Of a stretch of DNA of 64,000 bases, positions 30,751-64,000 are shown piece after piece. A model generated the notes under the pieces. It did no database searches and was not told where the DNA came from. It worked only from the letters and a program-made list of their open reading frames with translations. The position numbers were made by a program, and so were the translations under genes. The stretch's first letter is position 1; every line of letters starts with the position of its first letter. This DNA comes from Macrostomum hystrix (Eukaryota; Animalia; Platyhelminthes), in the NCBI GenBank assembly GCA_950097015.1, contig CATNEN010000014.1, forward strand, positions 1,240,001 to 1,304,000, in the 5' to 3' direction.

Positions 30751-30789
30751 CTCCACATAATTAATCGTTCCTAAGTTAGAAAGTAAGGT

Positions 30790-31885: not shown

Positions 31886-31964
31886 ACGATACGATGGAAA
31901 CAGTCAAACAGCGAAAAAAGCAGAGACCAAGTCGGAGGTCCAGGTAGTTCTCAGCTCGGGCAGC

Positions 31965-40208: not shown

Positions 40209-43200
40209 TATGGGTCAGAAAATATTATAATTACGAATAAGATAAATTAATATTTATCTTGCGCAAAACAAACAACAAATAGCAAATCCATATGTGACGG
40301 TGTAACATTAGGTAGTTTAATTGCTTATTTATTCTATAGTAATTCGCTACATTACAAATTGCTGACAATATTATTATTTATATGCTAAGCACGTTTACTA
40401 ATTATTGTTATATGGTAGGGTAATGTCCATCAACCAAACAGTGTATCTTCAAAACCAAGCAAGAATTTCAACTTCTTCCTTGGTCTTGTGCAAGACAGAA
40501 ACAAGCTATTGTGTTGTTTACAAACAACTAATTTGAAAGTTGAAGAAATTATCTACAAGCTGAGGCATGATGTGCAATGAAGCATTAAGAGGAAAGAAAG
40601 ATAATGATGTTTCAGTAGAAATTTTTATTGCAAAAGCATACTTTTTAACAACATTTTTTAGTATGTACTTTAGATGAAGATTGTATGTGGTTGCTTGCCA
40701 ATTAAATGACCATAAATGTAGTTATTTATAGAACATGAAAAATGCTTTCAAATTACATAATTCATGATAGTTCACACCTTAAAATAAGATTAAACCACTC
40801 ACTCAAATTGTAAAACCAAACATCAAATTCTCTGTTTGGTTTGAAGATACATGAAAATCATTGTTTGGTTTTAGATAAAAAGCAGGAATAACTTTTTTCT
40901 ATTTGATAGCATAGCAAAAGCAGATACCTTTTAGAAAGATGTAACTGTTTTCTATAACTTGGCTTTTGATTTATCATCATATCTTAAATAGAAAATCTGT
41001 AGCTTAGGTTTGAAGTTACAATAATACACATTCTTGTTTGGTTGATGATACATTACCCTATCATTCTAAGAATTATCTGTGTTTTTTTAAAAGCAACACA
41101 TGTATATTTTTCTGCTCTACCGGGCCTTGTGTCGAGCGTGTGAGCATCGAGATAACTTTGGAAATATATGTATATATACATACTTATTTATATCAAATAT
41201 AATTCGACGATATTACGCTACACTAATCTTAGTCCTTTGTCCTTACCGTTATTCGTCACACAAGTTTCATTTTTTTACAAAAAGGTTTTCAAATTAATTT
41301 TTTATAAAATAAAACAAATTTCCACATATAAGTAAGTAAAGGAATGAAAAATATGTTTATTAACAAACACACCTTAATTTTATTATTATATATTTATATT
41401 CGTAAACTTCAGCGAAGCTAAAAATATCTGCTTAACTTTTGTGCTTTGCAGGCTTAATTCACAAGGACCAACCTACTACGAAGACCATCTTCTTCTAGGG
41501 GTCCTTGTTAATACGTACATCATATACTTGATGTATCGAAAGCAAATATTTCAGAGCCCTGACTAGTCGCATCTCGGAGTTGTAGACCCTGGAGCCCCCC
41601 TGCACTCTGAGATACGAGAGTTTTGTTAGCGTATAGAGTTGCACAACGTGTGGCCGGATGTAATGCGCAATTGGTATTGCAGAAAAATATTTTTATCATG
41701 GCGTACACAAATGTACAAAATTTTTTGTATTTTTTTAAAATTATTTTAATTACTATAAATGCCCTCTAATGTGTTGTGGTCTTAAGCTTTTGAAGTGAGT
41801 GTTGAGAGTTCTGCAAGCCTCGTGTGTGCACGTTGCTTCGCATTTGGTAGTGCCAATTTTGAAGCATCCTCTATTACATTTTATTTTATCGGTAAGGCCT
41901 GACAAAATAAGTGTTCTCGGGTGTGTACCATGCTCGATCTGTTTTACCCTAGTAGCTGGACTATCGAATCAGCTGCTTTATCTGCTTCTTGCTTGCTATC
42001 TCATGTCCCTATTCGAACATCCCATGCATAAATTTTGGAGTATAAAGCCTACAGGAAAGCTGATTTCAATCGTCTGCTAACATATCAATATGTTTTTAAC
42101 CATTATTTTCAGTCTCCGCATCATTGCTTTACTTTCAATTTTCTTTATTTGCATATATTATAGCGACCCACAATCGACGCATTTTTTGAACTGCGCCTGA
42201 ATATTTTCAAGACTGATGAGTGCCTTCGCAAATCATTTCCCTGTCCCTATGGTGCTTGCAGGCAAATTCTGAGCAGGCTTTCAGCAAAGAACGCTATTGA
42301 AAACCGTCGAGTTGTCTGGCTGTATTATGAGCGTAAAATTGTCGGTAAGTCAAAATCTTCTTATTCAAAAAGTAAGAAAACTGCTTATCTTAAATCTGCA
42401 GTCGATAGATCCACTCGAGTTGCTGTTGCTGCTTCTGTTGTGCCTGCCCTATGTGTGCTCATATACGGTTGTTTTTGCACAAATCACGTTTTTCGATTTT
42501 GACAGTCAATTGTAACAAAATTTTGCAACTGACAGACGTTAATGTCAGACTTTTTCTGAGAGTAGTCATCTAGGTGTTTCTAATAAGTACAAATTTTGGC
42601 TCATTCTTATGCTTCCCCTATCCTTAGTATAGGTACAAGGTCATTATTTCATTTCAAGCAAGTCACGTGACCAGCTGGCCTGAGGTGTACAAAACATCGT
42701 GCAATGACAGCGAACATACACTCAAATAAAAGTACGTCAAAAATGTAGTTCAATGACACCAAGCACGCCGCGCTTCGGTAATCCGCTCAGAAGTTACAGG
42801 CTAAAAAGTATGTTCGATATGCAAGCCCCCCGTACTGTCGTTAAAGTTTACATTTCCGTACCGGCAACGACTTCAATAAACTAAGACAAAAATTCAAGAT
42901 ATATATATTGTGTGCAATTTAGTTGTGTACCTTGTCTAAAAAGTCAGATTTTCCTAGCATGTCCTCGTTTCTTATTTTTTGTATATTTGTATCATGAAAA
43001 ATGCAAAAAAATAGCCTAAATAATCACGTTTTGACTTTAGCAGTGTACTAGCAAGTTTTGCCCCCTTCGGGGAGCACTACTGGTCAGACAAAAAAATCTT
43101 GTGCCATGCGGAAGGACAAAACACACCTGAAAGCAAACAAAAACGTAAACTCATTTGGTCAGTAATAATTTCCCTGATTGCGAATATACGTTATTGCGAG

Positions 43201-43397
43201 TTAACGAAAATTAGAATTCTCACTAAATACAAAAATAGTCAGGCTGAGCTTGAATACATTCTGAGACATCCGGTCAGTACACCAAGAGCCCCATTGGGGC
43301 AAAAATAACCCAAGTAACTTACGTTTCATACAACTCAGCTTAATGCTACTGAGGTACATGTGAATACTATCCACTCAGCAATAAAAAATTAATGTCC

Positions 43398-44162
43398 CCA
43401 CAGCAGCAGAGAACTAATTCCCCCCCAGCAGCAAAGAACTAATTCCCCCAGCAGCAGAGAATTAATTCCCCCCTAATTCCCTCCAGCAGCAGTGAACTAA
43501 TTCCCCCCAGCAGCAGAGAACTAATTCCCCCCAGCAGCAGTGAACTAATTCCCCCCTCAGCAGCAGAGAACTAATTCCCCCCAGCAGCAGTGAACTAATT
43601 CCCCCCAGCAGCAGTGAACTAATTCCCCCCAGCAGCAGTGAACTAATTCCCCCCAGCAGCAGAGAACTAATTCCCCCCAGCAGCAGTGAACTAATTCCCC
43701 CCTCAGCAGCAGAGAACTAATTCCCCCCAGCAGCAGAGAACTAATTCCCCCCAGCAGCAGAGAACTAATTCCCCCCAGCAGCAGAGAACTAATTCCCCCC
43801 CAGCAGCAGAGAACTAATTCCCCTCAGCAGCAGTGAACTAATTCCCCCCAGCAGCAGTGAACTAATTCCCCCCAGCAGCAGAGAACTAATTCCCCCCCAG
43901 CAGCAGAGAACTAATTCCCCCCAGCAGCAGAGAACTAATTCCCCCTAATTCCCCTCAGCAGCAGAGAACTAATTCCCCCTAATTCCCCTCAGCAGCAAAG
44001 AACTAACTCCCCCCCAGCAGCAGAGAACTAATTCCCCCCCTCAGCAGCAGAGAACTAATTCCCCCCCCAGCAGCAGAGAACTAATTCCCCCCAGCAGCGG
44101 AGAACTAATTCCCCCTAATTCCCCTCAGCAGCAGAGAATTAATTCCCCCCTAATTCCCCTCA
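43398..44162. repeat. ~24-bp minisatellite (CAGCAGCAGAGAACTAATTCCCCC)n; continues at 47573-47660 and 50043-50493
   Basis: The same unit lies on both sides of the LINE and again after the 2.3-kb block. Confidence 0.95.
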
Positions 44163-47100
44163 CCACCCTGGTCGAACTCTGCTCTGCCAGGAATTATGAT
44201 CTCATGGTCGCCGGCGATATCAACGCCCACCATACCCACTGGGTCAGCACAGGGATAAACCAGAGAGGCGAAGACCTCCTGTCCTATGTTACCTCTACGA
44301 CCCTGGAGTTCTGTAACTCCGGGTCTACGCCTACCTTCGACAATGGACGCTGGTCAGAGGTGATTGACGCCACGCTCGCTTCACCCAAGCTCTTTCAGAG
44401 TATCGTGGAGTGGCGCGTTCTCCCGGAGCCATCCCTCTCTGACCATAAGTTCATTCACTTTCATGTGGCGAGCGCTCGCAGCCTTAACCACATCACGTGG
44501 AGACAGAACGCCAGAAATACTGATTGGGAAGCCTTCAGGCATGCCTTGGAGGCAACCCATCGGTCTTCGGGCCAACCACCCACTATTTCGACGTGCCGAG
44601 AGGCGGACGAGTGCGCGACTGTTTTAACAGAAACGCTAACCGCCGCCTTCGAGGCAGCCTGTCCCCTAAAAGCCTACAAAGGGAAGACATCTGCGCCGTG
44701 GTGGAATCCTCAGCTCGGCGACCTCCGTCGCAGAGCGAAGAAATTACACCGCAGAGCGAACAAAACCAGGAGCCCTGCAGACAGACCGCCTACCTTGAAG
44801 CCATCCATGAGTTCAAGAGGGAGATCAGGACTGCCAAGGCCTAGAAGTGGCGTCAATACTGCGAGGAGCTAGAGGGCTCACGCCCCACCTCCAGGATTGT
44901 CAAAGCACTTACGCTAGACAAAATGTCCAAGCTCTCCTCGGTTAAGCGAACCGACGGCACGTCAACTGACAACCCAGGAGAAACGCTTGAGGTCATGCTC
45001 TCTGCCTTCTTCCCCAACGAGCCAACCAACCTGACCACCTCAGACCACACTGAGGGAGGCCAGATGCTGGCTGCCTCTATCATCACGGAGGACCGCATCG
45101 TTAAAGCGGCCACCTCCTTTAAGCCTTTCAAGGCTCCAGGACCTGATGGCATCGTACCTGCCTTTCTTAGAGAGGCGGTTAAATGCCCAGGTTTCCTGCG
45201 CTCTCTTTGCAGCCTCTATCGAGCCTGCATCACGCTCGGGTACGTCCCGCAGGCATGGACCGAGGCGAAGGTGATTTTTATCCCGAAGCCAGGCCGCCCG
45301 GACTACCAGTCCATTAAATCCTTCAGACCAATCAGCCTAACCACCTTCCTGGTCAAGCTGATGGAGAGACTAGTGCTGTGGCGCCTTCTCTCAGTGGAAC
45401 TGAAGAACGCGCCGCTCAGCGACAACCAGCATGCTTTTCGGGCGGGTCGCTCCACCGAAAGCGCGCTGCACATTCTGGTCGACAAATTGGAGAAAGCTGT
45501 GCTTGGCACCGGCTTCGCCTGAAGTGTCTTCCTGGATATTGATGGTGCCTTTGACAACGTCCTCTTCGAAGCGTTCCGCAAAGCCCTTTACGAGAGGCAC
45601 ACTCACTCGTCCCTCACCAGATGGATCATGTATATGATCAGTCATCGCACGGTCACTGCCAACCTGCTGGGCCACCAACGGACGGTCCCCGTCCGCAAAG
45701 GGAGCCCGCAGGGAGGGGTCCTCTCTCCTATTCTCTGGAACATGGTCATTGACGAGCTCCTCCGAGACGATCGTCCTGACCCAATCCTGAAGGTGGGGTA
45801 TGCGGACGATGTCACTGCTGTGGCATCTGGCCCATCCCCTGACACTCTCAGGGACCTCCTTCAGAATTTCATCCACTCTGCTGAACAATGGGCGGGTCGC
45901 TGTGGTCTGAAGCTCTCCGAGACCAAGACTGCAGTGATCATGTTCACCAGCAGAAACAAGTGGCAGATACAGCCGCTTAGGCTTTACGGTAAGGAAAAGG
46001 ATCACCCTGGACCATAGGCTGAACTGGTCTCCCCATGTTCAAACCAAAACCAAGAGGGCCCTCGCGATCCTCGCGCAGCTGCGGAGGGCCGTTGGCACCA
46101 CCTGGGGGCTCACCCCCAAGCGCCTCTGGTGGATCTATACTGCAATGGTCAGGCCAGCTGTCTCGTACGGCAGCTTGATCTGGGCCAGTGCCCTGCAGAT
46201 GAAGACCTGCCTGGAGGCACTTAGGAAAACGCAAGGGCGCGCTTGTCGCATGACCATGAGTGCCCCACCGTCTGCTCCTTACGACGGCCTCAATGCCTTC
46301 CTCGACGCTCCCCCGCTGGACATTTTTGTCCGCAGGGAAGCCGCCAAAACAGCGCGTCGGCTCATTGACGCCGGCGTCCGCTTCACGCCGCAAAGAGCAA
46401 TGGCAAAGCGCAAACTTCTGCCTCACACCGATCTGTGCCTTCGTGACTTGAAAGATGGCGGCGGACTCCACGTCTTATCTGACGGCGAACCACGCACTCT
46501 CAATCTCACCCAGCGCTACAAAATCATCATTCCCTCGAGGGAAGACGCTAACGACCACTGGAACCACCAGGAGGTCCACTGCTACACGGACGGATCCCTA
46601 AAAGACGGCCTTGCCGGCTTTGGGGTCTGCATCCTGATCAACGGCCGCGTCGTCGCCACGCATGCCCAACATACTGGGAGACTCTCTACGGTCTTCCAGA
46701 ATGAAATCCTTGCCATCAGCTTTTGTGCCGCAGAGCTGAATGCCAGGAATACGAGAGGAGAGACTATCATCATCCACTCTGACAGCCAAGCGGCCTTACA
46801 AGCCCTTTGCCGCACCACCACGTGCTCCCGGACAGTCACTGACTGTGCCCGGCAACTCAACCTCCTGGCCAGTAACAACACGGTCAAGCTGAGCTGGATC
46901 CCAGGGCATGCGGGCTTCCCAGGGAACGAGCTTGCGGATACCCTTGCCAAGCAAGGTGGCTCTGGCTCTCTCGATCCTGGGCCCTGCTCCCCTGGTCCCG
47001 ATCCCCATCACGGTCATCAATCGCCTTATTGATGACTGGGCTGAATCCCTGCACAGGGACAGATGGGCGGGCACCCAGAACTGTCGGCAATCCCGTGCCG

Positions 47101-47572
47101 CAGTTCCGCGCCCGTCTCGCAGGCTCCTTTTGAACCAAAACCGGAAGGATATCCGCGCCCTCGCCATGACCCTCACGGGCCACGGCTACCTCGCTAGGCA
47201 CTGTTTCCTCCGGGGCGACCTTGAGAGTGAACTCTGCCCATTCTGTGAGTACGACATCGAAGATGCTGAGCACTTTGTGTGTCACTGCCCTTTCTTTAAC
47301 AGAGACCGACTACGCTACCTCGGGCCCAACCCGTCTATGGACGAGATCTGCCAGCCCGACAGCATTCCACGGCTCGTCCAGTTCCTTCGTGCAACAAGAC
47401 GAGCCACTTTCTTCCCTACGGAAGACAACGCTGCAGGACGGACCGGCGGACCACCCTGACCGGCCCCGCGCCCTTGCCTGTCTGCGGGCCTACAGGGGTT
47501 AGCGGTATGGGCGACCCTCGCCTCCCCGCTGCGTCCATGGACCACCCTGCAGCTAAGTCAAGTAAGTAAGTC
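44163..47572 (+). mobile_element. 5'-truncated non-LTR retrotransposon with APE, RT, RNase H and C-terminal Cys/His knuckle (I-group; LOA/R1-like)
   Basis: VAGDINAHH...LSDHKFI (APE); KAPGPDGI, FRPISLT, FLDIDGAFD, GSPQGGVLSP, YADD (RT); CYTDGS, EILAI, SDSQAAL, WIPGHAG..GNELAD (RNase H); CPFC...EHFVCHC. Premature stops and frameshifts. (TAAG)-type tail. AATTCCCCTCA on both flanks (44152-44162 / 47573-47583). Confidence 0.9.
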
Positions 47573-50539
47573 AATTCCCCTCAGCAGCAAAGAACTAATT
47601 CCCCCCAGCAGCAGAGAACTAATCCCCCCCTGCAGCAGAGAACTAATCCCCCCAGCAGCAAATAACCATTTTAAACCAATAAACAAATTAAAAAAATTAA
47701 GAACTGATGTGGAGTGTGCTGCGGGAATCGAGTGGGAGTGTGAGCCAGCATAATTTTTCAAATTTTTAAGTGTCTAATAATTGCGACCCACGTAGCAGCT
47801 GGCCGCAAACACGATCATTAATCTTAGGGCCGGGTTTTGGGCGGCGGTGAATTAAGTAGCCGTCGAATCCCTTCTCCCTGGATCTGTCTAGACCCCTGTA
47901 GGAATGACTGATCGCGGCCATAGCTTTTATTGTATGAGTAGTTTAGGTCATAATTCCCCTCCAAACCGCGATCAGATATAGGGGATCACTCGGGCGTTAT
48001 GAGTGATCATTAATTCTTCATGTCCCCTCTTCTTTACAGTATTCGAGCCCAGCTCGACTTTATGACCTCCCTCCTTTAGATACATGTAAATGTCACTGTA
48101 GGCAGGTCGGCGCCTGCGCTTCCCATTGTCCTGGCGGAGTAACAATCATTGGCCGACTGCCGACGGCTGTTCGAGCAGAACATCTGTCGTTTCCCGCAGT
48201 CGGTTCATTGGGTAATCGGGGTGGCCATTGCCGCTTCGATTCCCCGTTGACAGGCTGGCGCGAATGTGGGTTGCTTTGATGGATGTCGGGGTTGGCGTGC
48301 TGCAGGACTATTTAAGAAGGCGCGCTGCGCTGCCCCTAGTGGAACCTTTTTCCTTCCGGAGGACCTTTTTCTCCCGCCGGCTCTTCCCCTTCTCCCCTGC
48401 CGGACTTACCTTTGCCGGGCCGGACTCCCACCGGACCCAGAGCACCTTTCCGGACCCACGTAGGGCATAGACCCCTGAGCCTTGAGCTCCGAGCAGATAG
48501 TGCAGGCCAATTGCCTGTTTCCATTCCCTAAGCGCAAGCCACCTCTTTAGGTGAGCTCCAAATTGAGCCTCTGAGCTCCCAGTGTGTTGGCCCCTGCCAA
48601 CTCGCAGAAGTTTCTTCCCTCTGCCTTACTGTCTTGCCCATCCTTTCTCCCCGAGAACAACGGGACTGCAGCACGCGGCCAAACGAGATCCAGCTAAGTA
48701 ATCCGCGCAGCGGTTTATTATTGTTAATCCTAAGGGACAATTTACTTTTAGTTAGGCGGCACTTAGCGGGAGGGGAGTTAGGGAAGTTTTCAGCCTAATA
48801 AAACCACTTAATCTAAAGCACCTTTAACTTATTGGGCTTAGCTTTATAACAACTTAACTCCTTTTATTATGTCTCCTTTTTACTTTTATTTTATCAATAT
48901 ACAGCCCTCGGTCATGAGTGGCTAATCGCCTAGGGGGCGGGCTCTGGCACAGCCGAGCTGAAAGCTGCGGCAGGAAGGCAATTGTAAGCGCGCATGAGAG
49001 TAATATGGAGCTAGGGATTTGCAAGTAAAATGCGGAGTGTAGCACGTGTTGTCTTTCTGCCCAGGGGTGGGGAATTCCTTGGCGGGTTTTCCTCTCTTTC
49101 TGGCGGAACTGGGAGTGTGTGTCAAGCTCCTCTGCCAATTGAGTTTCCCTTCCGTTCCCCCTCCCGCTTCCACCGCCAAGGGAGTGGGGGGTGATGATCT
49201 TTTAATCTTACGCTCGCATAATCACTCAGCCAGTGTTCAGCTTAATCTCTCCTGCCTCTGATTTCCTCAACTCGCACAGACTCGGGTTGCTAGTTATCTA
49301 ATGTGTAGGCTGCAGTCTAATGTACCGAATGTGTCTGATGTTTCATGAGTAGGATTCTGGCTATGGATTTCACTTTCGGGTTCGGAGTACCACCTTTCTA
49401 GACCACTGTAGCGCAAATTCAGGAATCCCCTGGTGAGGCGTGTCTCGATCCATTCTGGGGTCTTCACCCTAGTCTAAAACGGAAGTTACAGAAGGCTCTA
49501 TTTTTTCGGCTTGTCTAAGATCTGTGTGACAAACTAGGAGCCGCGAGCTCCGGGGACCCAAGTTCCCAAATGTCTGCGGTGGCAACGTAGGCGCATTGGG
49601 TGGTGGCGCTACCCTAGATCATTTTCCGCTTTGCCGATAGCCTTTCCGCATTTCTAAGACAAGAGCCTAGGCCGAGTCGACCACTGCTACCAAGTTTAGG
49701 AGTCAGTTACGAACATGCTACTGATGACAGTAGGCTGCATAGCCCTGTCCTATCCGTCTGCGGGTAGTCCGACATCTATTTAGACTTTTAGCCGGTTTCG
49801 AGCACTGCTTGGGGTAGGCACGGCAGTCATGCCTGTGGCCTATGGGTTGAGTGGGACTGGCCAGCCTGAGGCCGAGAGGACCACTCCCTGCATCCACTGT
49901 CTCTCCCTTCATCTCTCCCTTCATCCCTCTTTCCGCGGCAACTCGCGAGACTTTGCGGTACGACTTCCGACTCTATCGCCATCCCCACACTCCTTTCCTT
50001 CACGAGGACAGATCATCGGATTGCAAAACCCGCAGCTATTTCAGAACTAATTCCCCCCCCAGCAGCAGAGAACTAATTCCCCATAATTCCCCTCAGCAGC
50101 AGAGAATTAATTCCCTCCTAATTCCCCTCAGCAGCAAAGAACTAATTCCCCCCTGCAGCAAAGAACTAACTCCCCTCAGCAGCAAAGAACTAATTCCCCC
50201 CTGCAGCAAAGAACTAATTCCCCTCAGCAGCAAAGAACTAATTCCCCCCTGCAGCAAAGAACTAATTCCCCTCAGCAGCAAAGAACTAACTCCCCTCAGC
50301 AGCAAAGAACTAATTCCCCCCTGCAGCAAAGAACTAATTCCCCTCAGCAGCAAAGAACTAATTCCCCCCTGCAGCAAAGAACTAATTCCCCTCAGCAGCA
50401 AAGAACTAATTCCCCCCTGCAGCAAAGAACTAATTCCCCCCTGCAGCAAAGAACTAATTCCCCCAGCAGCAGAGAGCTAATCCCCCCAGCAGCAAATAAC
50501 CATTTTTAACCAATAAACGAATTAAAAAACTTTTAGACG

Positions 50540-52400: not shown

Positions 52401-54139
52401 CTAGCAAGTTTTGCCCCCCTTCGGGGAGCAGAAATATTTTTAATTCGTCCAGTATACACTTTTTAGCAGCTTTATTTTTAGCCTTTTTACGCTACAATGA
52501 TCAGTTGACAATGATCCCCCAGTTGATAATGATCCCCCGGTTGACAATGGTCCCCCAGTCGACAATGATTCCCAGTTGATGATGATCCCCCAGTTGACAA
52601 TGATCACCCAGTTGACATTGATCCCCCAGTTTACAATGATCCCACAGTTGACAATGATCCCCCAGTTGACAATGATCCCACAGTTGACAATGATCCCCCA
52701 GGTTACAATGATCCCCCAGTTGATGATGATCACCCAGTTGACAATTATCTCCCAGTTGACTATGATCCCCCATTGATGATGATCCCCAGTTGACAATGTT
52801 ACCCCAGTTGGCTATTACCCCCTAGTTGACATTGATCCCCCAGTTGATGATGATCACCCAGTTGACAATGATGACCCAGTTGACATTGATCCCCCAGTTT
52901 ACAATGATCCCACAGTTGACAATGATCCCCCAGTTGACAATGATCCCACAGTTGACAATGATCCCCCAGTTCACAATGATCCCCCAGATGATGATGATCC
53001 ACCAGTTGAAGATGATCCCCCAGTTGACAATGATCCCCCAGTTGACATTGATCCCCCAGGTAACAATGATCCCCCAGTTGATGATGATCACCCAGTTGAA
53101 AATTATCTCCCAGTTGACTATGATCCCCCATTGATGATGATCCACAGTTGACAATGTTACCCCAGCTGGCTATTACCCCCTAGTTGACAATGATCCCCCA
53201 GTTGATGATGATCACCCAGTTGACAATGATCTCCCAGTTGACCATGATCCCCCATTTGATGATGATTCCCCAGTTTATAATTATCCCACAGTTGACGATT
53301 ATCCCCCAGTTCTGGTTTAGCTATGATTCAAACTCTGGTTTAGCCATGATTCAAACTCTAGTTTAGCCATGATTCAAACTCTGGTTTAGACATGATTCAG
53401 ACGCTGGTTTAGCCATGATTCAGACGCTGGTTTAGCCATAATTCAGGCAGTGGTTTTGCTATGCAAAAGTGAGTTAAAAGTTTCCCCCTTTTTTTCAAAA
53501 TTAAATAAAAGTTTATCGCTTCGCATCCATCACTACTGACTGATAATTAGTTTAAATGATTTGACGCAGTGCAGAGTCGAACCAGGGACACTTCGCCTAG
53601 CCTAGCCTAACCTATTCGTAGTGCCTACACATCGGCTATTCCGACTTTTGGTTAGTGGGTGCAAAAATCAGCCTTATAAAATGAATTCTCAAAGACCTGG
53701 CTTTGCACAATGAAGTAAGAAAATAGAGTACACTCAGTCTCGCGGTTGGTTGTGTACATTTATTTCCAATTTGTCTCCAGAGTGCAGGCTTCAAATTCAA
53801 TCAGCTAGGGGTTGTTGCGCAATTTGACGATGCAATTCTAATTCAGTGGCTGTGAGTAAAATTCTCAATAGGCCAAGATGGTTTGACCTTTAAAAAATCA
53901 TGTTTTTTTCGAATATTTAATCCCCTTAGCAAAAAAGTTAAGCTTAATAAAAATACGTGGATAATTCTCCCCATATTTAGCATCTTTTGGTGAAGAAATG
54001 GTGAAAATTGGTTGAGCCGTTCGGGAGAAAATCAATTACAACAAACCAACCAACCAAGCAAGCATTTCATTTTTAGTATAGTGGAGGATGGATGGAGGAT
54101 GGAGGAAGCAAGCAAGATTTTCATTTTTAGTATATTAGA
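52401..54139 (-). mobile_element. Non-autonomous Helitron-type element, long variant B (18-bp and 23-bp arrays)
   Basis: Plus strand starts CTAGCAAGTTTTGCCCCCCTTCGGGGAGC (same terminator as A) and ends in the shared head ...TTTTAGTATATTAGA. Confidence 0.75.
52500..53450. repeat. 18-bp array (CAGTTGACAATGATCCCC)n (52500-53310) followed by 23-bp array (GGTTTAGCCATGATTCAGACTCT)n (53312-53450)
   Basis: The same two arrays appear in the same order at 61873-64000. Confidence 0.93.
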
Positions 54140-55163
54140 CTAGCTGCCTTCGCTACCCTCTGGGTAGCCTCCCTGTGAGTTCTTATCAGTTCGTTATCAA
54201 AACTGGCTCTGATGCAATCATTAAAATTGGCACTGGAGGCCTCACTGTGCACAAGCTGAAAACAAGAATGCATTAGAAAAGCCTATTTAAAACTGTTTTT
54301 CGAATATTTAATCCCCTTGGCAATGGAATTAAGCTTAATAAAAACACGTGTACCGATTCGGGACCATTTGTGATCTTTTGGCGAAGGAATTGTGAAAATC
54401 GGTTAAGCCGTTCGGGAGCTAGTCGATTGCAAACAAGCAAGCAAGCAAGCAAGCAAGATTTTCATTTTTAGTATATTAGACTAGCTGCCTTCGCTACCCT
54501 CTGGGTAGCCTCCCTGTGAGTTCTTATCAGTACGCGCGTGCGTTATCAAAACTGGCTCTGATGCAATCATTAAAATTGGCACTGGAGGCCTCACTGTGCA
54601 CAAGCTGAAAACAAGAATGCATTAGAAAAGCCTATTTAAAACTGTTTTTCGAATATTTAATCCCCTTGCCAATGGAATTAAGCTTAATAAAATTACGTGT
54701 ACCGATTCCGGCCCATTTGTGATCTTTTGGCGAAGGAATTTTGAAAATCGGTTGAGCCGTTCGGGAGCTAGTCGATTGCAAACAAACATACAAGCAAGAT
54801 TTTCATTTTTAGTATATAAGAAGACTAGCTGCCCTTCGCTACCCTCTGGGTAGCCTCACTGGAGTTCTTATCAGTGCGTTATCAAAACTGGCTCTGATGC
54901 AATCATTAAAATTGGCACTGGAGCCTCACTGTGCACAAGCTGAAAACAAGAATGCATTAGAAAAGCCTATTTAAAACTGTTTTTCGAATATTTAATCCCC
55001 TTGGCAATGGAATTAAGCTTAATAAAAACACGTGTACCGATTCGGGACCATTTGTAATCTTTTAGCGAAGGAATTGTGAAAATCGGTTGAGCCGTTCGGG
55101 AGCTAGTCGATTGCAAACAAGCAACCAACCAAGCAAGCATTTCATTTTTAGTATAGTGGAAGA
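54140..55163 (-). mobile_element. Three head-to-tail ~340-bp non-autonomous Helitron units (plus-strand starts 54140, 54481, 54825)
   Basis: Each unit on the minus strand reads 5'-TC(TAA)TATACTAAAAATGAAAAT-(CTTG)n-...AACGGCTCAACCGATTTTC...GCTACCC AGA GGGTAGC-GAAGGCAG-CTAG-3'. Confidence 0.85.
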
Positions 55164-58100
55164 CTAGCAATTTAGGCCCCCCTTTGGGGCTTGAAGGCAA
55201 CTTTACAATAATAAAACAGTATTTAGTAAGTCAATAGATCTCAACTCTCAACTAAGATATCTATTGATTCTGAACTTAACTTTATATCGATTTTGAGCCT
55301 AAATATCTATCAACACTGAGCCTAGATATCTACCCGTGCTGAGCCAAGATTTCTATCAATTCTGAGCTTCGATATCTATCAATTCTGAGCTTAGAATTCT
55401 ATCAATTCTGACCTTAGATTTCTATAAATTCTGAGCTTTAATATCTATCGATTCTTAGCTTAAATTTCTATAGATTTTTAACCAATGAAGTTATCTAGAT
55501 ATCTATCAAATCTAAAGCACGATATCTATCCATTCTGAGCCTAGATATCTACCAGTGCTGAGCCTAGATATCTATAAAAATGTTGAGCCAAAAAATCTAT
55601 CAATTCTGAGCCTAGATAAATAACAATGCTGTGCCTAATTATCAATAAATATTTTGAGCCTAGATAACTATCAATGCTGAGCCTAGTTAACTATCAAGAC
55701 TGAACCATTGGAATCTATCGATTCTGAGCTTGGATATCTATCAATGCTGAGCCTAGATGTCCATAAAAATGTTGAGCTTAGATATTTATCGATTCTGAGC
55801 CTAGTAATCTATCCATTCTGGGCCTAGATAACTATCCATGCTGAGCTTTAATATCTATCGATTCTGAGCCTAGATAACTATCACGCTGAGCCTTGATATG
55901 TATAAAATTGTTGAGCCTAGATAACTATCAATGCTGAGCCTAGTTTTCTTTCGATTCTGACCCGTGGAATCTTTCAATTCTGAGCTTCGATATCTATCCA
56001 ATCTGAGCCTTGATTTCTATCGATTCTGAGCCTAGGAATCCATCCATTCTGAGTCTAGATAACTATCAATGCTGAGCCTAGTTATCTACAAAAATGTTGA
56101 GCCTAGATAACTATCAATGCTGTGCCTAGTTTTCTATCGATTCTGACCCTTGGAATCTATCAATTCTGAGCTTGGATATCTATCAATGCTGAGCCTAGAT
56201 GTCTAAAAATGTTGATCCTAGATATTTATCGATTCTGAGCCTAGTTTTCTATCGATTCTGAGCCTAGTAATCTATCAATTCTGGGCCTAGATTTCTATCA
56301 ATGCTGAGCCTAGTTAACTATCAATGTTGAGCCTAGATAACTATCAATGCTGAGCCTAGTAATCTATCAATTCTGGGCCTAGATTTCTATCAATGCTGAG
56401 CCTAGTTAACTATCAATGTTGAGCCTAGATAACTATCAATGCTGAGCCTAGATAACTATCAATGCTGAGCCTAGGTAACTATCAATGCTGAGCCTAGGTA
56501 ACTATCAATGCTGAGCCTAGTCTTCTATCGATTCTGACCCTTGGAACCTATCAATTCTGAGCTTGGATATCTATCAATGCTGAGCCTAGATATCTTTCAA
56601 TGCTGAGCCTAGATATCTTTATAACTGTTGAGCCTTGATAACTATCAATGTTGAGCCTAGATAACGATCACGCTGAGCCTTAAAATCTCGAAAATGTTGA
56701 GCCTAGATAACTATCACGCTGAGCCTTGATATGTATAAAATTGTTGAGCCTAGATAACTATCAATGCTGAGCCTAGTTTTCTTTCGATTCTGACCCGTGG
56801 AATCTATCAATTCTGAGCTTGGATATCTATCCAATCTGAGCCTTGATTTCTATCGATTCTGAGCCTAGGAATCCATCCATTCTGAGTCTAGATAACTATC
56901 AATGCAGAGCCTAGATATCCATAAAAATGTTGAGCCTAGGTAACTATCGATGCTGAGCCTAGATAACTATCAATGCTGAGCCTAGATAACTATCAATGCT
57001 GAGCCTAGATATCTATCAATGCTGAGCCTAGATAACTATCAATGCTGAGCCTAGATAACTATCAATGCTGAGCCTAGATAACAATCAATGCTGAGCCTAG
57101 ATAACTATCGATGCTGAGCCTAGATAACTATCAATGCTGAGCCTAGATAACTATTAATGCTGAGCCTAGATAACTATCAATGCTGAGCCTAGATAACTAC
57201 CAATGCTGAGCCTAGATAACTACCAATGCTGAGCCTAGATAACCATCAATGGTGAGCCTAGATAACTATCAATGCTGAGCCTAGATAAATATCAATCCTG
57301 TGCCTAGATAACTATCAATGCTGAGCCTAGATAACTATCGATGCTGTGCCTAGATATCTATAAAAATGCTGAGCCTAGATAACTATCAATGCTGAGCCTG
57401 GATAGCTATCAATGCTGAGCCTGGATAGCTATCAATGCTGAGCCTAGATAACTATCAATGCTGAGCCTGGATAGCTATCAATGCTGAGCCTGGATAGCTA
57501 TCAATCCTGTGCCTAGATAACTATCAATGCTGAGCCCAGATAAATATCAATGCTGAGCCTGGATAGCTATCAATGCTGAGCCTAGAAATCTATTAAAATG
57601 TTGAGCCTAGAAATCTATAAGAATGTTGAGCCTAGATATGGATCGATTCTGAGCCTAGGAATCTATTAATTCTAAGCCTAGATATCTATCAATGCTGAGC
57701 ATAGATATCTATCAATGCTGAGCCTAGATATCTATCAATGCTTTTGCAAGTAAGTAAGCAAGTAAGCAAGTAAGTAAGCTAGTATAATCAAGAAATGTTA
57801 CTTGCTTCCAAGAAAGGCCGATCACTTGAATCAGTTTAGTTCTCAGCTGTTGCCTTTGGAGTATGCTGTGATGTGAATGAATCTGCTATAATTGAAATCT
57901 GCTATATCTGCTAAATGAGTTTGAATAAAACTAAATTTAAAAAATAAAAAAATATCTCAGTGCCGAACAGATAACAGAAGCCAGCTCAGCCTGTACACAT
58001 TGGGCAGTAATTATCTCGCCAGTGGGGTTGACACAGCTATGAACATTTGGGTGAGAAATTCCTTATCAGTACGCTCGCCTAACAAAACTGGCTCTGATGC

Positions 58101-58364
58101 AATCATTAAAATTGGCACTGGAGCCTCACTGTGCACAAGCTGAAAACAAGAATGCATTAGAAAAGACTATTTAAAACTGTTTTTCGAATATTTAATCCCC
58201 TTGGCAATGGAATTAAGCTTAATAAAAACACGTGTACCGATTCGGGACCATTTGTGATCTTTTGGCGAAGGAATTGTGAAAATCGGTTAAGCCGTTCGGG
58301 AGCTAGTCGATTGCAAACAAGCAAGCAAGCAAGCAAGCAAGATTTTCATTTTTAGTATATTAGA
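55164..58364 (-). mobile_element. Non-autonomous Helitron-type element, long variant C (third terminator; 2.5-kb 23-bp array)
   Basis: Plus strand starts CTAGCAATTTAGGCCCCCTTTGGGGC (hairpin GCCCC/GGGGC) and ends in the shared head. It shares the extended segment CTCGCCAGTGGGGTTGACACAG with variant A (~58015 vs ~52035). Confidence 0.75.
55240..57745. repeat. 23-bp minisatellite (GCTGAGCCTAGATAACTATCAAT)n, ~105 units, divergent at the left end
   Basis: Tandem periodicity inside variant C. Confidence 0.93.
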
Positions 58365-61300
58365 CTAGCTGCCCTTCGCTACCCTCTGGGTAGCCTCCCT
58401 GTGAGTTCTTATCAGTACGCGCGTGCGTTATCAAAACTGGCTCTGATGCAATCATTAAATTTGGCACTGGAGGCCTCACTGTGCACAAGCTGAAAACAAG
58501 AATGCATTAGAAAAGCCTATTTAAAACAGTTTTTCGAATATTTAATCCCCTTGGCAATGGAATTAAGCTTAATAAAAATACGTGTACCGATTCGGGACCA
58601 ATTGTGATCTTTTAGCGAAGGAATTGCGAAAATCGGTTGAGCCGTTCGGGAGCTAGTCGATTGCAAACAAACATACAAGCAAGATTTTCATTTTTAGTAT
58701 ATTAGACTAGCTGCCTTCGCTACCCTCTGGGTAGCCTCCCTGTGAGTTCTTATCAGTACGCGCGTGCGTTATCAAAACTGGCTCTGATGCAATCATTAAA
58801 ATTGGCACTGGAGGCCTCACTGTGCACAAGCTGAAAACAAGAATGCATTAGAAAAGCCTATTTAAAACTGTTTTTCGAATATTAAATCCCCTTGGCAATG
58901 GAATTAAGCTTAATAAAAATACGTGTATATGTGTCCCCATATTTGGCATCTTTTGGTGAAGAAATGGTGAAAATCGGTTGAGCCGTTCGGGAGAAAATCA
59001 ATTACAAGCAAGCAAGCAAGATTTTCATTTTTAGTATATAAGACTAGCTGCCTTCGCTACCCTCTGGGTAGCCTCACTGGAGTTCTTATCAGTTCGTTAT
59101 CAAAACTGGCTCTGATGCAATCATTAAAGTTGGCACTGGAGCCTCACTGTGCACAAGCTGAAAACAAGAATGCATTAGAAAAGCCTATTTAAAACTGTTT
59201 TTCGAATATTTAATCCCCTTGGCAATGGAATTAAGCTTAATAAAAATACGTGTACCGATTCCGGCCCATTTGTGATCTTTTGGTGAAGGAATTGTGAAAA
59301 TCGGTTGAGCCGTTCGGGAGCTAGTCGATTGCAAACAAGCAAGCAAGATTTTCATTTTTAGTATATTAGACTAGCTGCCTTCGCTACCCTCTGGGTAGCC
59401 TCCCTGTGAGTTCTTATCAGTTCGTTATCAAAACTGGCTCTGATGCAATCATTAAAATTGGCACTGGAGCCTCACTGTGCACAAGCTGAAAACAAGAATG
59501 CATTAGAAAAGCCTATTTAAAACTGTTTTTCGAATATTTAATCCCCTTGGCAATGAAATTAAGCTTAATAAAATTACGTGTACCGATTCCGGCCCAATTG
59601 TGATCTTTTGGCGAAGGAATTGCGAAAATCGGTTGAGCCGTTCGGGAGCTAGTCGATTGCAAACATACAAGCAAGCAAGCAAGATTTTCATTTTTAGTAT
59701 ATTAGACTAGCTGCCTTCGCTACCCTCTGGGTAGCCTCCCTGTGAGTTCTTATCAGTTCGTTATCAAAACTGGCTCTGATGCAATCATTAAAATTGGCAC
59801 TGGAGCCTCACTGTGCACAAGCTGAAAACAAGAATGCATTAGAAAAGCCTATTTAAAACTGTTTTTCGAATATTTAATCCCCTTGGCAATGAAATTAAGC
59901 TTAATAAAATTACGTGTACCGATTCCGGCCCAATTGTGATCTTTTGGCGAAGGAATTGCGAAAATCGGTTGAGCCGTTCGGGAGCTAGTCGATTGCAAAC
60001 ATACAAGCAAGCAAGCAAGATTTTCATTTTTAGTATATTAGACTAGCTGCCTTCGCTACCCTCTGGGTAGCCTCCCTGTGAGTTCTTATCAGTACGCGCG
60101 TGCGTTATCAAAACTGGCTCTGATGCAATCATTAAATTTGGCACTGGAGGCCTCACTGTGCACAAGCTGAAAACAAGAATGCATTAGAAAAGCCTATTTA
60201 AAACTGTTTTTCGAATATTTAATCCCCTTGGCAATGGAATTAAGCTTAATAAAAATACGTGTACCGATTCCGGCCCATTTGTGATCTTTTGGCGAAGGAA
60301 TTTTGAAAATCGGTTGAGCCGTTCGGGAGCTAGTCGATTGCAAACATACAAACATACAAGATTTTCATTTTTAGTATATAAGATTAGAAGACTAGCTGCC
60401 TTCGCTACCCTCTGTGTAGCCTCCCTGTGAGTTCTTATCAGTACGCGCGTGCGTTATCAAAACTGGCTCTGATGCAATCATTAAAATTGGCACCGGAGGC
60501 CATACTGTGCACAAGCTGAAAACAAGAATGCATTAGAAAAGCCTATTTAAAACAGTTTTTCGAATATTTAATCCCCTTGCCAATGGAATTAAGCTTAATA
60601 AAAATACGTGTACCGATTCGGGCCCATTTGTGATCTTTTGGCGAAGGAATTTTGAAAATCGGTTGAGCCGTTCGGGAGCTAGTCGATTGCAAACATCGAT
60701 TGCAAGCAAGCAAGCAAGATTTTCATTTTTAGTATATTAGACTAGCTGCCTTCGCTACCCTCTGGGTAGCCTCACTGGAGTTCTTATCAGTTCGTTATCA
60801 AAACTGGCTCTGATGCAATCATTAAAATTGGCACTGGAGGCCTCACTGTGCACAAGCTGTAAACAAGAATGCATTAGAAAAGCCTATTTAAAACTGTTTT
60901 TCGAATATTTAATCCCCTTGGCAATGGAATTAAGCTTAATAAAATTACGTGTACCGATTCCGGCCCAATTGTGATCTTTTGGCGAAGGAATTGTGAAAAT
61001 CGGTTAAGCCGTTCGGGAGCTAGTCGATTGCAAACATACAAGCAAGCAAGCAAGATTTTCATTTTTAGTATATTAGATTAGAAGACTAGCTGCCTTCGCT
61101 ACCCTCTGTGTAGCCTCCCTGTGAGTTCTTATCAGTACGCGCGTGCGTTATCAAAACTGGCTCTGATGCAATCATTAAAATTGGCACCGGAGGCCATACT
61201 GTGCACAAGCTGAAAACAAGAATGCATTAGAAAAGCCTATTTAAAACAGTTTTTCGAATATTTAATCCCCTTGCCAATGGAATTAAGCTTAATAAAAATA

Positions 61301-61771
61301 CGTGTACCGATTCGGGCCCATTTGTGATCTTTTGGCGAAGGAATTTTGAAAATCGGTTGAGCCGTTCGGGAGCTAGTCGATTGCAAACATCGATTGCAAG
61401 CAAGCAAGCAAGATTTTCATTTTTAGTATATTAGACTAGCTGCCTTCGCTACCCTCTGGGTAGCCTCACTGGAGTTCTTATCAGTTCGTTATCAAAACTG
61501 GCTCTGATGCAATCATTAAAATTGGCACTGGAGGCCTCACTGTGCACAAGCTGTAAACAAGAATGCATTAGAAAAGCCTATTTAAAACTGTTTTTCGAAT
61601 ATTTAATCCCCTTGGCAATGGAATTAAGCTTAATAAAATTACGTGTACCGATTCCGGCCCAATTGTGATCTTTTGGCGAAGGAATTGTGAAAATCGGTTA
61701 AGCCGTTCGGGAGCTAGTCGATTGCAAACATACAAGCAAGCAAGCAAGATTTTCATTTTTAGTATATTAGA
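58365..61771 (-). mobile_element. Ten head-to-tail ~330-350-bp non-autonomous Helitron units (Helitron-derived satellite)
   Basis: CTAG junctions at 58365, 58707, 59044, 59371, 59707, 60043, 60392, 60742, 61086 and 61436; each unit has the terminal hairpin and TC head. Confidence 0.88.
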
Positions 61772-64000
61772 CTAGCATGTTTTGCCCCCCTTCGGGGAGC
61801 AGAAATATTTTTAATTCGTCTTGTATATACTGTTTAGCAGCTGAATTTACAGCTTTTTAAAGCTAAAATAAACCCCCAGTTGACAATGATCCCCCAGTTG
61901 ACAATGATCCCCCAGTTGACAATGATCCCCCAGTTGATGATGATCCCCCAGTTGACAATGATCCCCCAGTTGACAATGAACCCCCAGTTGACAATGATCC
62001 CCAGTTGACAATGATCCCCCAGTTGATGATGATCCCCCAGTTGACAATGATCCCCCAGTTGACAATGAACCCCCAGTTGACAATGATCCCCAGTTGACAA
62101 TGATCCCCCAGTTCACAATGATCCCCTTGTTGACAATGATCCCCCAGTTGACAATGATCCCACAGTTGACAATGATCCCCCAGTTGATGATGATCCCCCA
62201 GTTGACAATGATCACCCAGTTGACAATGATCCCCCAGTTGACAATGATCCCCCAGTTGACAATGATCTCACAGTTGACAATGATCCCCCAGTTTACAATG
62301 ATCCCCCAGTTGACAATGATCCCCCAGTTGACAATGATCACCCAGTTGACAATGATCTCACAGTTGACAATGATCCCCCAGTTGACAATGATCCCTCAGA
62401 TGACAATGATCCCCCAGTTGACAATGATCACCCAGTTGATGATGATCCCCCAGTTGATAATGATACCCCAGTTGACAATGATCCCCCAGTTGACAATGAT
62501 CCCCCAGTTGACAATGATCCCCCAGTTGACAATGATCCCCCAGTTGACAATGATCTCACAGTTGACAATGATCCCCCAGTTGACAATGATCCCCAGTTGA
62601 CAATGATCCCCCAGTTGACAATGATCACCCAGTTGACAATGATCCCCCAGTTGACAATGATCCCCCAGTTGACAATGATCCCCCATTTGATGAGGACTCC
62701 TTATTGATGATGATGCCCAGTTGACAATGTTGCCCAGTTAATTTTTATATTAGCTTCTTTTGTAGAAAATTGAGAAGAACAACAATTAAATGATTATTAG
62801 GCAAAATATTTATCATACAAATTATATCATTATGACGTTATGAGATAACAAACTCAAAATTCAATTCAATGACAAAAGACAAATTTTGCCATGATTCAAA
62901 CGCTGGTTTAGCCATGATTCAGACTCTGGTTTAGCCATGATTCAGACTCTGGTTTAGCCATGATTCATACTATGGTTTAGCCATGATTCAGACGCTGGTT
63001 TAGCCATGATTCAGACTCTGGTTTAGCCATGATTCAGACTCTGGTTTAGCCATGATGCAAACTCTGGTTTAGCCATGATTCAAACTCTGGTTTAGCCATG
63101 ATTCGGACTCTGGTTTAGCCATGATTCAGACTCTGGTTTAGCCATGATTCAAACTCTGGTTTAGCCATGATTCAGACGCTGGTTTAGCCATGATTCAGAC
63201 GCTGGTTTAACTATGATTTAAACTCTGTTTTAGCCATGATTCAGACTCTGGTTTTGCCATGATTCAGACTCTGGTTTAGCCATGATTCAGACTATGGTTT
63301 AGCCATGATTCAGACTCTGGTTTAGCCATGATTCAGACCCTGGTTTAGCCATGATTCAAACTCTGGTTTAGCCATGATTCAGACTCTGGTTTAGCCATGA
63401 TTTAAACTCTGTTTTAGCCATGATTCAGACCCTGGTTTAGCCATGATTCAAACTCTGGTTTAGCCATGATTCAGACTCTGGTTTTGCCATGATTCAAACT
63501 CTGGTTTAGCCATGATTCAGACTCTGGTTTAGCCATGATTCAGATTCAGACTCTGGTTTAGCCATGATTCAAACTCTGGGTTAGCCATGATTCAAAATCT
63601 GGTTTAGCCATGATTCAAACTCTGGTTTAGCCATGATTCAGACTCTGGTTTAGCCATGATTCAAACTCTGGTTTAGCCATGATTCAGACGCTGGTTTAGC
63701 CATGATTCAGACTCTGGTTTAGCCATGATTCAAAGTCTGGGTTAGCCATGATTCAAACTCTGGTTTAGCCATGATTCAAACTCTGGGTTAGCCATGATTC
63801 AGACTCTGGTTTAGCCATGATTCAGACTCTGGTTTAGCCATGATTCAGACTCTGGTTTAGCCATGATTCAAACTCTGGTTTAGCCATGATTCAGACGCTG
63901 GTTTAGCCATGATTCAGACTCTGGTTTAGCCATGATTCAAAGTCTGGGTTAGCCATGATTCAAACTCTGGTTTAGCCATGATTCAAACTCTGGGTTAGCC
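61772..64000 (-). mobile_element. Non-autonomous Helitron-type element, long variant D (B-family; 5' end outside window)
   Basis: CTAGCATGTTTTGCCCCCCTTCGGGGAGCAGAAATATTTTTAATTCGTC matches the start of B, followed by the same 18-bp and 23-bp arrays. Confidence 0.75.
61873..64000. repeat. 18-bp array (61873-62740) and expanded 23-bp array (62885->64000)
   Basis: Same units as in variant B, with the 23-bp array much longer here. Confidence 0.95.

What the first reader, a model, noticed from the sequence alone, without database searches (positions are those of the whole stretch)
43048..64000. >20.9-kb head-to-tail Helitron concatemer built from one shared head and three alternative terminators
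Read on the minus strand, the whole right third of the window parses into consecutive modules. Each begins 5'-TC (usually TCTAATATACTAAAAATGAAAAT) and ends with a GC hairpin plus CTAG, and modules join directly as CTAG|TC. The leftmost end is CTAG|T against ordinary flank. Order on plus: A (9.35 kb), B (1.74 kb), 3 short units, C (3.2 kb), 10 short units, D (>2.2 kb). 5'-TC, 3' hairpin+CTRR, A|T targets and tandem concatemers are established Helitron rolling-circle signatures, and Helitron-derived satellites are known in Drosophila and molluscs. What is unusual is a mixed array of short and long family members with three terminators and different cargo, suggesting repeated insertion into its own ends or read-through rolling-circle amplification (inference). 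No Rep/helicase is in the window.
Basis: partly seen in the sequence, partly recalled or inferred. Interest (0 to 1): 0.85.

Follow-up and report, generated by a model that had tools for sequence, protein, structure and literature searches.

The report
Head-to-tail train of non-autonomous Helitrons
The right third of the window is a same-direction chain of at least 17 small rolling-circle jumping genes (Helitrons) joined exactly end to start; it is a clear example, but tandem Helitron arrays are already described in several organisms.

Summary
On the minus strand, 43048-64000 parses into 17 modules (A 9353 bp, B 1739, three ~341-bp units, C 3201, ten ~340-bp units, D >2229). Each ends in a GC hairpin, 7-8 nt and CTAG. 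Each but the last is followed at once by a TC-initiated head, and the last meets the flank as CTAG|T.

Four details need correcting:
- There are two head subtypes, not one. The native heads of A and B are capped by 26- and 34-nt fragments of the other subtype.
- Terminators T1 and T3 are variants of one design. Only T2 is different.
- The extra length of A is a nested 5'-truncated LINE, an unidentified 2.4-kb insert and minisatellites, not demonstrable cargo.
- The short-unit run contains perfect 336-bp and 686-bp duplicates, so unequal crossing-over also shaped it.

The termini fit canonical Helitrons: TC start, hairpin plus CTAG end, no subterminal inverted repeats. The family has very high word depth in runs of the source organism. 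Two other organism labels hold a terminator joined to at least the start of a head.

Tandem and abutting Helitrons, new 3' ends and Helitron-derived satellites are published. I file this as a new member of a known kind, of moderate interest. Other first-stage notes of this scan (unchecked) report similar CTAG|TC trains elsewhere in this genome. The formation mechanism is inferred. Long-read support, A|T target sites and the autonomous partner could not be tested.

The parts
43048..52400 (-). Module A (9353 bp), the 3'-most element. Terminator T1 lies at 43048-43075 and meets the flank as CTAG|T. The native head starts at about 52374, and a 26-nt fragment of the other head subtype sits at 52375-52400.
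43390..44162 (-). 24-bp minisatellite inside A. Further blocks lie at 47573-47666 and 50055-50500.
44163..47572 (+). Nested, 5'-truncated, frame-broken LINE with endonuclease, reverse transcriptase and RNase H, inserted in the 24-bp minisatellite. Its 3' end is an AAGT-type microsatellite. An 11-bp direct repeat flanks it at 44152-44162 and 47573-47583; this is weak evidence because the motif recurs in the array.
47667..50054 (.). Unidentified GC-rich 2.4-kb stretch between two blocks of A's minisatellite. It has no Pfam hit, no repeats and no other copy in the window.
50974..51833 (-). 21-bp minisatellite of A, 41 copies.
52401..54139 (-). Module B (1739 bp). T1 lies at 52401-52430, an 18-bp minisatellite at 52502-53311 and a 23-bp minisatellite at 53311-53463. 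The native head starts at about 54088 behind a pile-up of TC-initiated oligonucleotides. A 34-nt (or 33-nt) fragment of the other head subtype sits at 54106-54139.
54140..55163 (-). Three short units: s1 (341 bp), s2 (344 bp) and s3 (339 bp). Each is a roughly 305-nt head plus terminator T2.
55164..58364 (-). Module C (3201 bp). T3 lies at 55164-55190, a 23-bp minisatellite at 55241-57742 (about 107 copies in two blocks), a unique segment at 57743-58061 and the head at 58062-58364. The head is 96.7% identical to s1 over 299 nt.
58365..61771 (-). Ten short units t1-t10 (327-350 bp, T2 terminators). t4 equals t5 and t7+t8 equal t9+t10. t2 is a mosaic with a subtype-2 body. An 8-nt TC-initiated filler sits at two junctions.
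61772..64000 (-). Module D (>2229 bp, cut by the window end), of the same type as B. T1 lies at 61772-61801, an 18-bp minisatellite at 61873-62690 and a 23-bp minisatellite at 62884-64000. The 23-bp array has at least 48 copies, against about 6 in B.

Best explanation
The region is a same-orientation train of at least 17 non-autonomous Helitrons with canonical-type ends, from one family complex.

Shown:
- Every module starts with TC.
- Every module ends with a GC hairpin, 7-8 nt and CTAG.
- The modules join without any intervening base.
- The long members carry internal minisatellites.
- The 341-bp unit is the first ~305 nt of a C-type element fused to a foreign ~35-nt terminator.
- A LINE is nested in module A.
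- Parts of the short-unit run are perfect local duplicates.

Inferred mechanism:
1. The five junctions between unlike elements (D|t10, t1|C, C|s3, s1|B, B|A) arose because an incoming element was integrated exactly at the 5' nick site of a resident element. The transposase has to cut A|TC at a left end when it mobilises an element, so a resident left end is a ready-made target. On this view the train grows at its 5' side and A, next to the flank, is the oldest member.
2. The 26- and 34-nt head fragments capping A and B are short 3' transductions. Each was copied from a tandem donor when the terminator was bypassed and copying stopped a few tens of nt into the next head.
3. Runs of 341-bp units started in the same way, or as rolling-circle multimers, and were then expanded by unequal crossing-over.

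Confidence that this is a genuine Helitron train is about 0.85-0.9. The figure given here is for the whole statement including the mechanism.
For: The head motif occurs 16 times against 0 expected, all on one strand. There are 17 hairpin-plus-CTAG ends, 16 followed directly by TC and one by flank T. The hairpins fold with the 3' arm ending 11-12 nt from the terminus in T1, T2 and T3. No subterminal inverted repeat exceeds chance.

Similarity between s1 and C ends about 35 nt before the end of s1, where T2 begins. Perfect duplicates t4=t5 and t7t8=t9t10, with the 8-nt filler present in t8 but absent from t10, indicate in-register unequal exchange rather than separate insertions.

The D|t10 junction is exactly the donor layout needed to yield 'B-type element plus 26 nt of the next head'. 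A, the 3'-most member, is the only one carrying a nested LINE.

In reads, summed word depth on heads and on B's body is about 10^5 in run X2, where listed single records have depth 50-90. Depth falls from 44,471 to 638 across the junction at 55164. A 299-nt contig from organism B runs from a T2-terminated unit straight into 131 nt of the next head. A 240-nt contig from organism C crosses the same junction by 15 nt. Two organism-B contigs share only the terminator plus the first 19-23 nt of the head and then differ.

In the literature, Helraiser forms circles with a perfect junction of its two terminal sequences, bypasses terminators and creates new 3' ends, and bat Helitrons are found abutting 5' end to 3' end (PMC4778049). 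[quoted passage not shown]
Against: - Only one outer flank is visible (T after CTAG). The 5' end of the train lies beyond the window, so the A|T target and the absence of a target-site duplication are untested.
- No empty site and no autonomous RepHel partner could be examined.
- The age order A to D is supported only by the nested LINE.
- Internal junctions are G|T, not A|T, so any insertion between existing members would need a non-canonical target.
- The T3 hairpin is not better than shuffles (z 0.04).
- The reads laid were short Logan contigs. No record spans the array, so copy numbers in the homogeneous run are unverified.
- The TC-initiated pile-ups at some junctions are not explained by simple insertion.
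Confidence: 0.55

Rival explanations
1. Rolling-circle multimers. The transposase failed to terminate, or replicated a joined-end circle repeatedly. The resulting concatemers, or read-through composites copied from pre-existing trains, were integrated in one piece. On this view the train reflects a few large integrations rather than serial insertion at 5' ends.
For: CTAG|TC is exactly the joined-end junction of a Helitron circle (PMC4778049). Rolling-circle amplification is the published explanation for plant, bat and Drosophila arrays (PMC12628747 citing Xiong et al. 2016; PMC9248874 citing Pritham and Feschotte 2007). The homogeneous runs of 3 and 10 short units and the 26/34-nt caps fit terminator bypass. 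Near-identical short-unit junctions occur in other organism labels.
Against: One circle cannot produce units with different bodies and terminators. Five junctions between unlike elements occur in 21 kb. Short units differ by 2-10% and are mosaics of variants, apart from a few perfect duplicates whose breakpoints lie inside units. The published plant arrays have many 5' ends and a single 3' end, whereas here every unit has its own terminator.
Confidence: 0.25
2. An ordinary satellite or segmental-duplication locus. A composite repeat was amplified by unequal crossing-over alone, and the TC and CTAG motifs are incidental.
For: There are perfect 336-bp and 686-bp duplicates and variant mosaics in the short-unit run. 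Minisatellites are abundant throughout.
Against: Three different terminators share one geometry and always sit exactly before a TC head. Similarity between family members starts and stops at these points. Read depth steps at a junction, and contigs of other organisms share only the terminator plus 19-23 nt of head. Recombination alone does not produce five different base-perfect end-to-start joins.
Confidence: 0.05
3. Assembly artefact. Repeats were chained or mis-counted by the assembler, so that the order or the number of modules is not real.
For: The family has very high word depth. The array holds 100% identical units. No laid record spans the stretch.
Against: Junction sequences themselves occur in independent runs and in other organism labels. 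Unique bodies (A tail, B body, C tail and unique segment) anchor the order. An assembler cannot invent base-perfect CTAG|TC joins absent from reads.
Confidence: 0.05

Closest known systems
Tandem and abutting Helibat Helitrons of Myotis, and the Helraiser mechanism (Pritham and Feschotte 2007 as cited in PMC9248874; Grabundzija et al. 2016, PMC4778049)
   Same: TC start and a hairpin plus CTAG end. Head-to-tail copies occur. [quoted passage not shown] New 3' ends arise by truncation or read-through. Circles carry the same joined-end junction.
   Different: Here at least 17 members of several structural types form one uninterrupted train. The commonest member is only 341 bp. No transposase or activity data exist.
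Rolling-circle amplified, truncated Helitron arrays of plant centromeres (Xiong, Dooner and Du 2016, as summarised in PMC12628747)
   Same: Tandem arrays of Helitron-derived units, from a few to hundreds of copies, explained by the rolling-circle mechanism.
   Different: The plant arrays have many 5' ends and a single 3' end. Here every unit keeps its own terminator, and unlike elements are interleaved.
Tandem Helitron-1_DPe on the Drosophila pseudoobscura Y chromosome (PMC9248874)
   Same: Full and partial head-to-tail Helitron copies detected by 3'-5' junction searches.
   Different: That is a single autonomous-size family restricted mostly to one Y variant. The window holds a mixed train of non-autonomous elements.
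Cg_HINE / Helentron-carried satellite-like repeats of the Pacific oyster, and DINE-1-type elements (PMC7492417, PMC7992393)
   Same: Modular build: a conserved left flank with a short microsatellite, central tandem repeats of variable length, and a conserved right flank with a palindrome. The same array type occurs in different elements.
   Different: Those elements have 11-12-bp subterminal inverted repeats and prefer T|T sites. Here no such repeats exceed chance, and the ends are TC...CTAG with the hairpin 11-12 nt from the end, as in canonical Helitrons.
Helitron-like subtelomeric 372-bp arrays of Hydractinia and Helitron-derived tandem arrays of Xenopus (PMC11934779, PMC12001565)
   Same: Short Helitron-derived units repeated in tandem, together with associated minisatellites.
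   Different: Those arrays are homogeneous, and in Hydractinia only partial affinity to Helitrons was shown. Here intact termini are visible at every junction.

Membership tests
Canonical Helitron (Helitron1 / HLE1), non-autonomous | 5' terminus TC | tested here: met
   All 16 visible module starts begin with TC directly after the preceding CTAG. The native second heads of A and B read TTT... and TCC... respectively.
Canonical Helitron (Helitron1 / HLE1), non-autonomous | 3' terminus CTRR | tested here: met
   All 17 modules end in CTAG.
Canonical Helitron (Helitron1 / HLE1), non-autonomous | Short GC-rich hairpin about 10-12 nt upstream of the 3' end | tested here: met
   Stems of 5-8 bp end 11-12 nt from the terminus in T1, T2 and T3. 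Energies beat shuffles for T1 and T2 (z -1.9 to -2.8) but not for T3 (z 0.04).
Canonical Helitron (Helitron1 / HLE1), non-autonomous | No terminal inverted repeats | tested here: met
   The longest head/tail inverted match is 7-8 nt, reached by 9-27% of shuffles where any match was found; B and C had none of 7 nt or more.
Canonical Helitron (Helitron1 / HLE1), non-autonomous | Insertion between A and T without target-site duplication | tested here: inconclusive
   Only the 3' flank is visible, and it starts with T at 43047. The 5' end of the train is outside the window. No empty site was available. A metagenome scan with the head gave only chance bacterial hits.
Canonical Helitron (Helitron1 / HLE1), non-autonomous | Autonomous RepHel partner with matching termini in the same genome | not testable with these tools
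   No Rep or helicase domain was found in window ORFs of 140 aa or more that were scanned. Unchecked scan notes report RepHel elements elsewhere in this genome.
Canonical Helitron (Helitron1 / HLE1), non-autonomous | Many copies sharing the same boundaries | tested here: met
   Word depth is very high on heads and on B's body, and steps about 70-fold at the junction near 55164. Contigs of other organism labels end their similarity 19-23 nt into the head. The tool warns that depth is not a copy number.
Helentron / HINE (Helitron2) | 11-12-bp subterminal inverted repeats | tested here: not met
Helentron / HINE (Helitron2) | 5' microsatellite and central tandem repeats | tested here: met
   A (CTTG)n tract of variable length lies 25-50 nt from the 5' end. 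Minisatellites of 18, 21, 23 and 24 bp lie inside A, B, C and D. This feature alone does not define the family.
Helitron tandem array / Helitron-derived satellite | Complete units joined 3' end to 5' end in one orientation | tested here: met
   16 junctions, all on the minus strand.
Helitron tandem array / Helitron-derived satellite | Array confirmed by molecules spanning several units | tested here: inconclusive
   Only short Logan contigs were available. Single junctions are bridged, but no record spans the stretch.

The most novel reading that the evidence does not exclude
In this animal, a canonical-type Helitron family integrates preferentially at the 5' nick site of resident relatives. 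The left terminal sequence would then serve both as donor cleavage site and as target. Mixed trains would be built genome-wide and would seed satellite arrays. The TC-initiated oligonucleotide pile-ups and the 26-34-nt head caps would be footprints of repeated or abortive nick-and-join cycles at that site.
Probability: 0.35. Interest if true: 0.6.

Novelty: new member of a known kind. Interest (0 to 1): 0.35.

Why it matters
The locus shows intact termini at every junction of a mixed train. That makes it a clean natural record of how rolling-circle transposons chain together, acquire new terminators and turn into satellite-like arrays.

If insertion at resident 5' ends proves to be the rule in this genome, it would give a target preference for Helitrons that can be tested at the bench. 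It would also explain why structure-based Helitron finders mis-pair ends in such regions.

On its own, the locus adds an example rather than a new principle.

Tried and rejected
- A scan of metagenome contigs with the 21-nt head start gave two hits, both chance matches in bacterial-looking contigs. No dispersed copies were recovered for a flank analysis.
- Rfam and a tRNA scan of 42-64 kb and of the window found nothing, so the head is not a recognisable RNA-gene derivative.
- A strict scan for perfect-stem hairpin plus CTRR ends on both strands found no further convincing Helitron ends outside the array.
- The Helentron/HINE reading was rejected on the missing subterminal inverted repeats.
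- 'Cargo' in A was rejected for 44163-47572, which is a nested LINE, and is left open for 47667-50054.
- Two key papers (Pritham and Feschotte 2007; Yang and Bennetzen 2009) are not held and are cited only through papers that describe them.
- The single read-laying run returned only short assembled contigs, so it could not validate array length.
- The source organism is coded. A feature search on the sodium-channel ORF points weakly to an ecdysozoan.
Full report
**What is there**

All copies are on the minus strand and lie between 52352 and 61771, against none expected from shuffles.

Listing every CTAG|T on the minus strand shows 17 ends preceded by a GC-rich hairpin. The last G of each lies at 43048, 52401, 54140, 54481, 54825, 55164, 58365, 58707, 59044, 59371, 59707, 60043, 60392, 60742, 61086, 61436 and 61772. 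Sixteen are followed at once by TC and a head. The end at 43048 is followed by unrelated sequence that starts with T.

The modules, in plus-strand order, are:

| Module | Size |
|---|---|
| A | 9353 bp |
| B | 1739 bp |
| s1-s3 | 341, 344, 339 bp |
| C | 3201 bp |
| t1-t10 | 327-350 bp |
| D | >2229 bp, cut by the window end |

Tandem Repeats Finder sees the two short-unit runs as arrays of period 349 and 341. No head copy lies left of 43048.

**Termini**

There are three terminators:
- T1 (A, B, D) has a C-run, a GAA loop and a G-run, then 7 nt and CTAG.
- T3 (C) has the same design with an AAA loop and also ends in TGCTAG.
- T2 (all short units) has a different 7-bp stem with an AGA loop, then 8 nt and CTAG.

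In all three the 3' arm of the hairpin ends 11-12 nt from the terminus, which is the canonical Helitron spacing. Folding energies beat shuffles for T1 and T2 but not for T3, so the argument rests on the recurring geometry rather than on any single hairpin.

Heads and tails share no inverted repeat beyond chance. This argues against Helentron/HINE-type ends. The modular build is nevertheless HINE-like, with a variable (CTTG)n tract 25-50 nt from the 5' end and central minisatellites (PMC7492417).

1. The heads are homologous but fall into two subtypes. C and the short units are 92-100% alike. A and B are 77-79% identical to them. Units s3 and t2 are mosaics of the two subtypes.
2. The native heads of A and B do not touch the preceding CTAG. 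They are capped by 26-nt and 34-nt fragments of the first subtype's 5' end.
3. Module A is long because a 5'-truncated, frame-broken LINE sits on the plus strand at 44163-47572, inside A's 24-bp minisatellite. The LINE has endonuclease, reverse transcriptase and RNase H. An unidentified GC-rich 2.4 kb follows at 47667-50054. No captured gene was found.
4. B and D are the same element type. Their 18-bp arrays have about 45 copies each, but the 23-bp array has about 6 copies in B and at least 48 in D.
5. The 341-bp unit is the first ~305 nt of a C-type element joined to a ~35-nt piece carrying T2. Similarity to C stops at that point. This fits the new 3' ends documented for Helraiser and bat Helitrons (PMC4778049).

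**Dynamics within the array**

t4 and t5 are identical, and t7+t8 equal t9+t10. The 8-nt filler at the start of t8 is absent from t10, so the duplicated block has its breakpoints inside units. This is what in-register unequal exchange gives, not what separate insertions give.

The other units differ by 2-10% and share variants in mosaic fashion. The homogeneous runs therefore behave as a young satellite.

**Junction oddities**

Several junctions carry short pieces that start with TC, ahead of the full head:
- TCT at s3|s2.
- TCTTCTAA at t9|t8 and t7|t6.
- A pile-up of TCCTCCA, TCCTCCA and TCCA before B's native start.

Together with the 26/34-nt caps these are unexplained. They could be footprints of repeated nick-and-join at the left end. 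They could be short transductions from a tandem donor after terminator bypass; the D|t10 junction is exactly the donor layout that would give B plus 26 nt. Slippage is a third possibility.

**Evidence from reads**

Only Logan contigs were available.
- In runs of the source organism, summed word depth on the heads and on B's body is about 10^5. Individually listed records there have depth 50-90. Depth falls from 44,471 to 638 across the junction at 55164. The heads are thus far more abundant than C's tail, and abundance changes at the predicted boundary. The tool warns that depth is not a copy number.
- A 299-nt contig from a second organism label runs from a T2-terminated unit straight into 131 nt of the next head.
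- A 240-nt contig from a third label crosses the same junction by 15 nt.
- Two contigs of the second label share only a terminator plus the first 19-23 nt of the head and then diverge. This suggests that the first ~20 nt are the conserved left terminal sequence.
- No record spans the array, so unit counts remain unverified.

**What it is and how it formed**

The features meet every testable criterion of a non-autonomous canonical-type Helitron. Two criteria could not be examined: the A|T target, of which only the T side is visible, and the autonomous partner. No RepHel was found in the scanned ORFs. Unchecked scan notes report such elements elsewhere in this genome.

Five base-perfect joins between unlike elements cannot come from replication of one circle or from recombination alone. 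I therefore favour integration of incoming elements exactly at the 5' nick site of residents, followed by local unequal crossing-over. Rolling-circle multimers or read-through composites are the main rival.

Both ideas are already in the literature:
- Abutting Helitrons and terminator bypass (PMC4778049).
- Tandem copies in Drosophila (PMC9248874).
- Plant arrays and oyster shuffled loci (PMC12628747).
- Xenopus and Hydractinia arrays (PMC12001565, PMC11934779).

**Verdict**

The locus is a well-preserved mixed Helitron train, a new member of a known kind. First-stage notes of this scan (unchecked) describe further CTAG|TC trains on other DNA of the same genome, so this is probably a genome-wide habit of the family rather than a unique locus. 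Interest is moderate. It would rise if genome-wide flank statistics showed true targeting of resident 5' ends.

Noticed in passing
window 5243-7039 (-): An uninterrupted 598-aa ORF matches the amiloride-sensitive sodium channel family over nearly the full profile (E 1.6e-34). Feature look-alikes are mostly arthropod and nematode proteins. It appears to be an intronless channel gene.
   Followed up: partly
window 38653-40164 (+): A 503-aa ORF has a full reverse-transcriptase domain (E 1.9e-30). This is a second retroelement, about 3 kb left of the train's 3' end.
   Followed up: no
window 16000-22000 and 30000-32000: These stretches have extreme strand composition (GC skew up to 0.64, AT skew up to 0.35) and long overlapping ORFs in several frames. 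They are probably further tandem-repeat blocks unrelated to the Helitron heads.
   Followed up: no
window 19148-19642 (-): An ORF fragment matches the protein-tyrosine phosphatase domain (E 1.1e-19). It is likely an exon of a host gene.
   Followed up: no
window 55241-57742 (-): Each 23-bp unit of C's minisatellite contains a 10-bp palindrome and ends in CTAG on the element's strand. This amounts to about 100 miniature 'palindrome plus CTAG' motifs that are never followed by a head.
   Followed up: no
window 54081-54105, and the junctions at 54824, 60391 and 61085: Pile-ups of 3-8-nt oligonucleotides, each starting with TC, lie in front of full 5' ends. See the notebook entry under 'unexplained'.
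   Followed up: partly
window 47667-50054: A GC-rich 2.4-kb stretch inside module A's minisatellite has no protein domain, no internal repeat and no other copy in the window. Whether it is a nested element or captured DNA is unresolved.
   Followed up: partly
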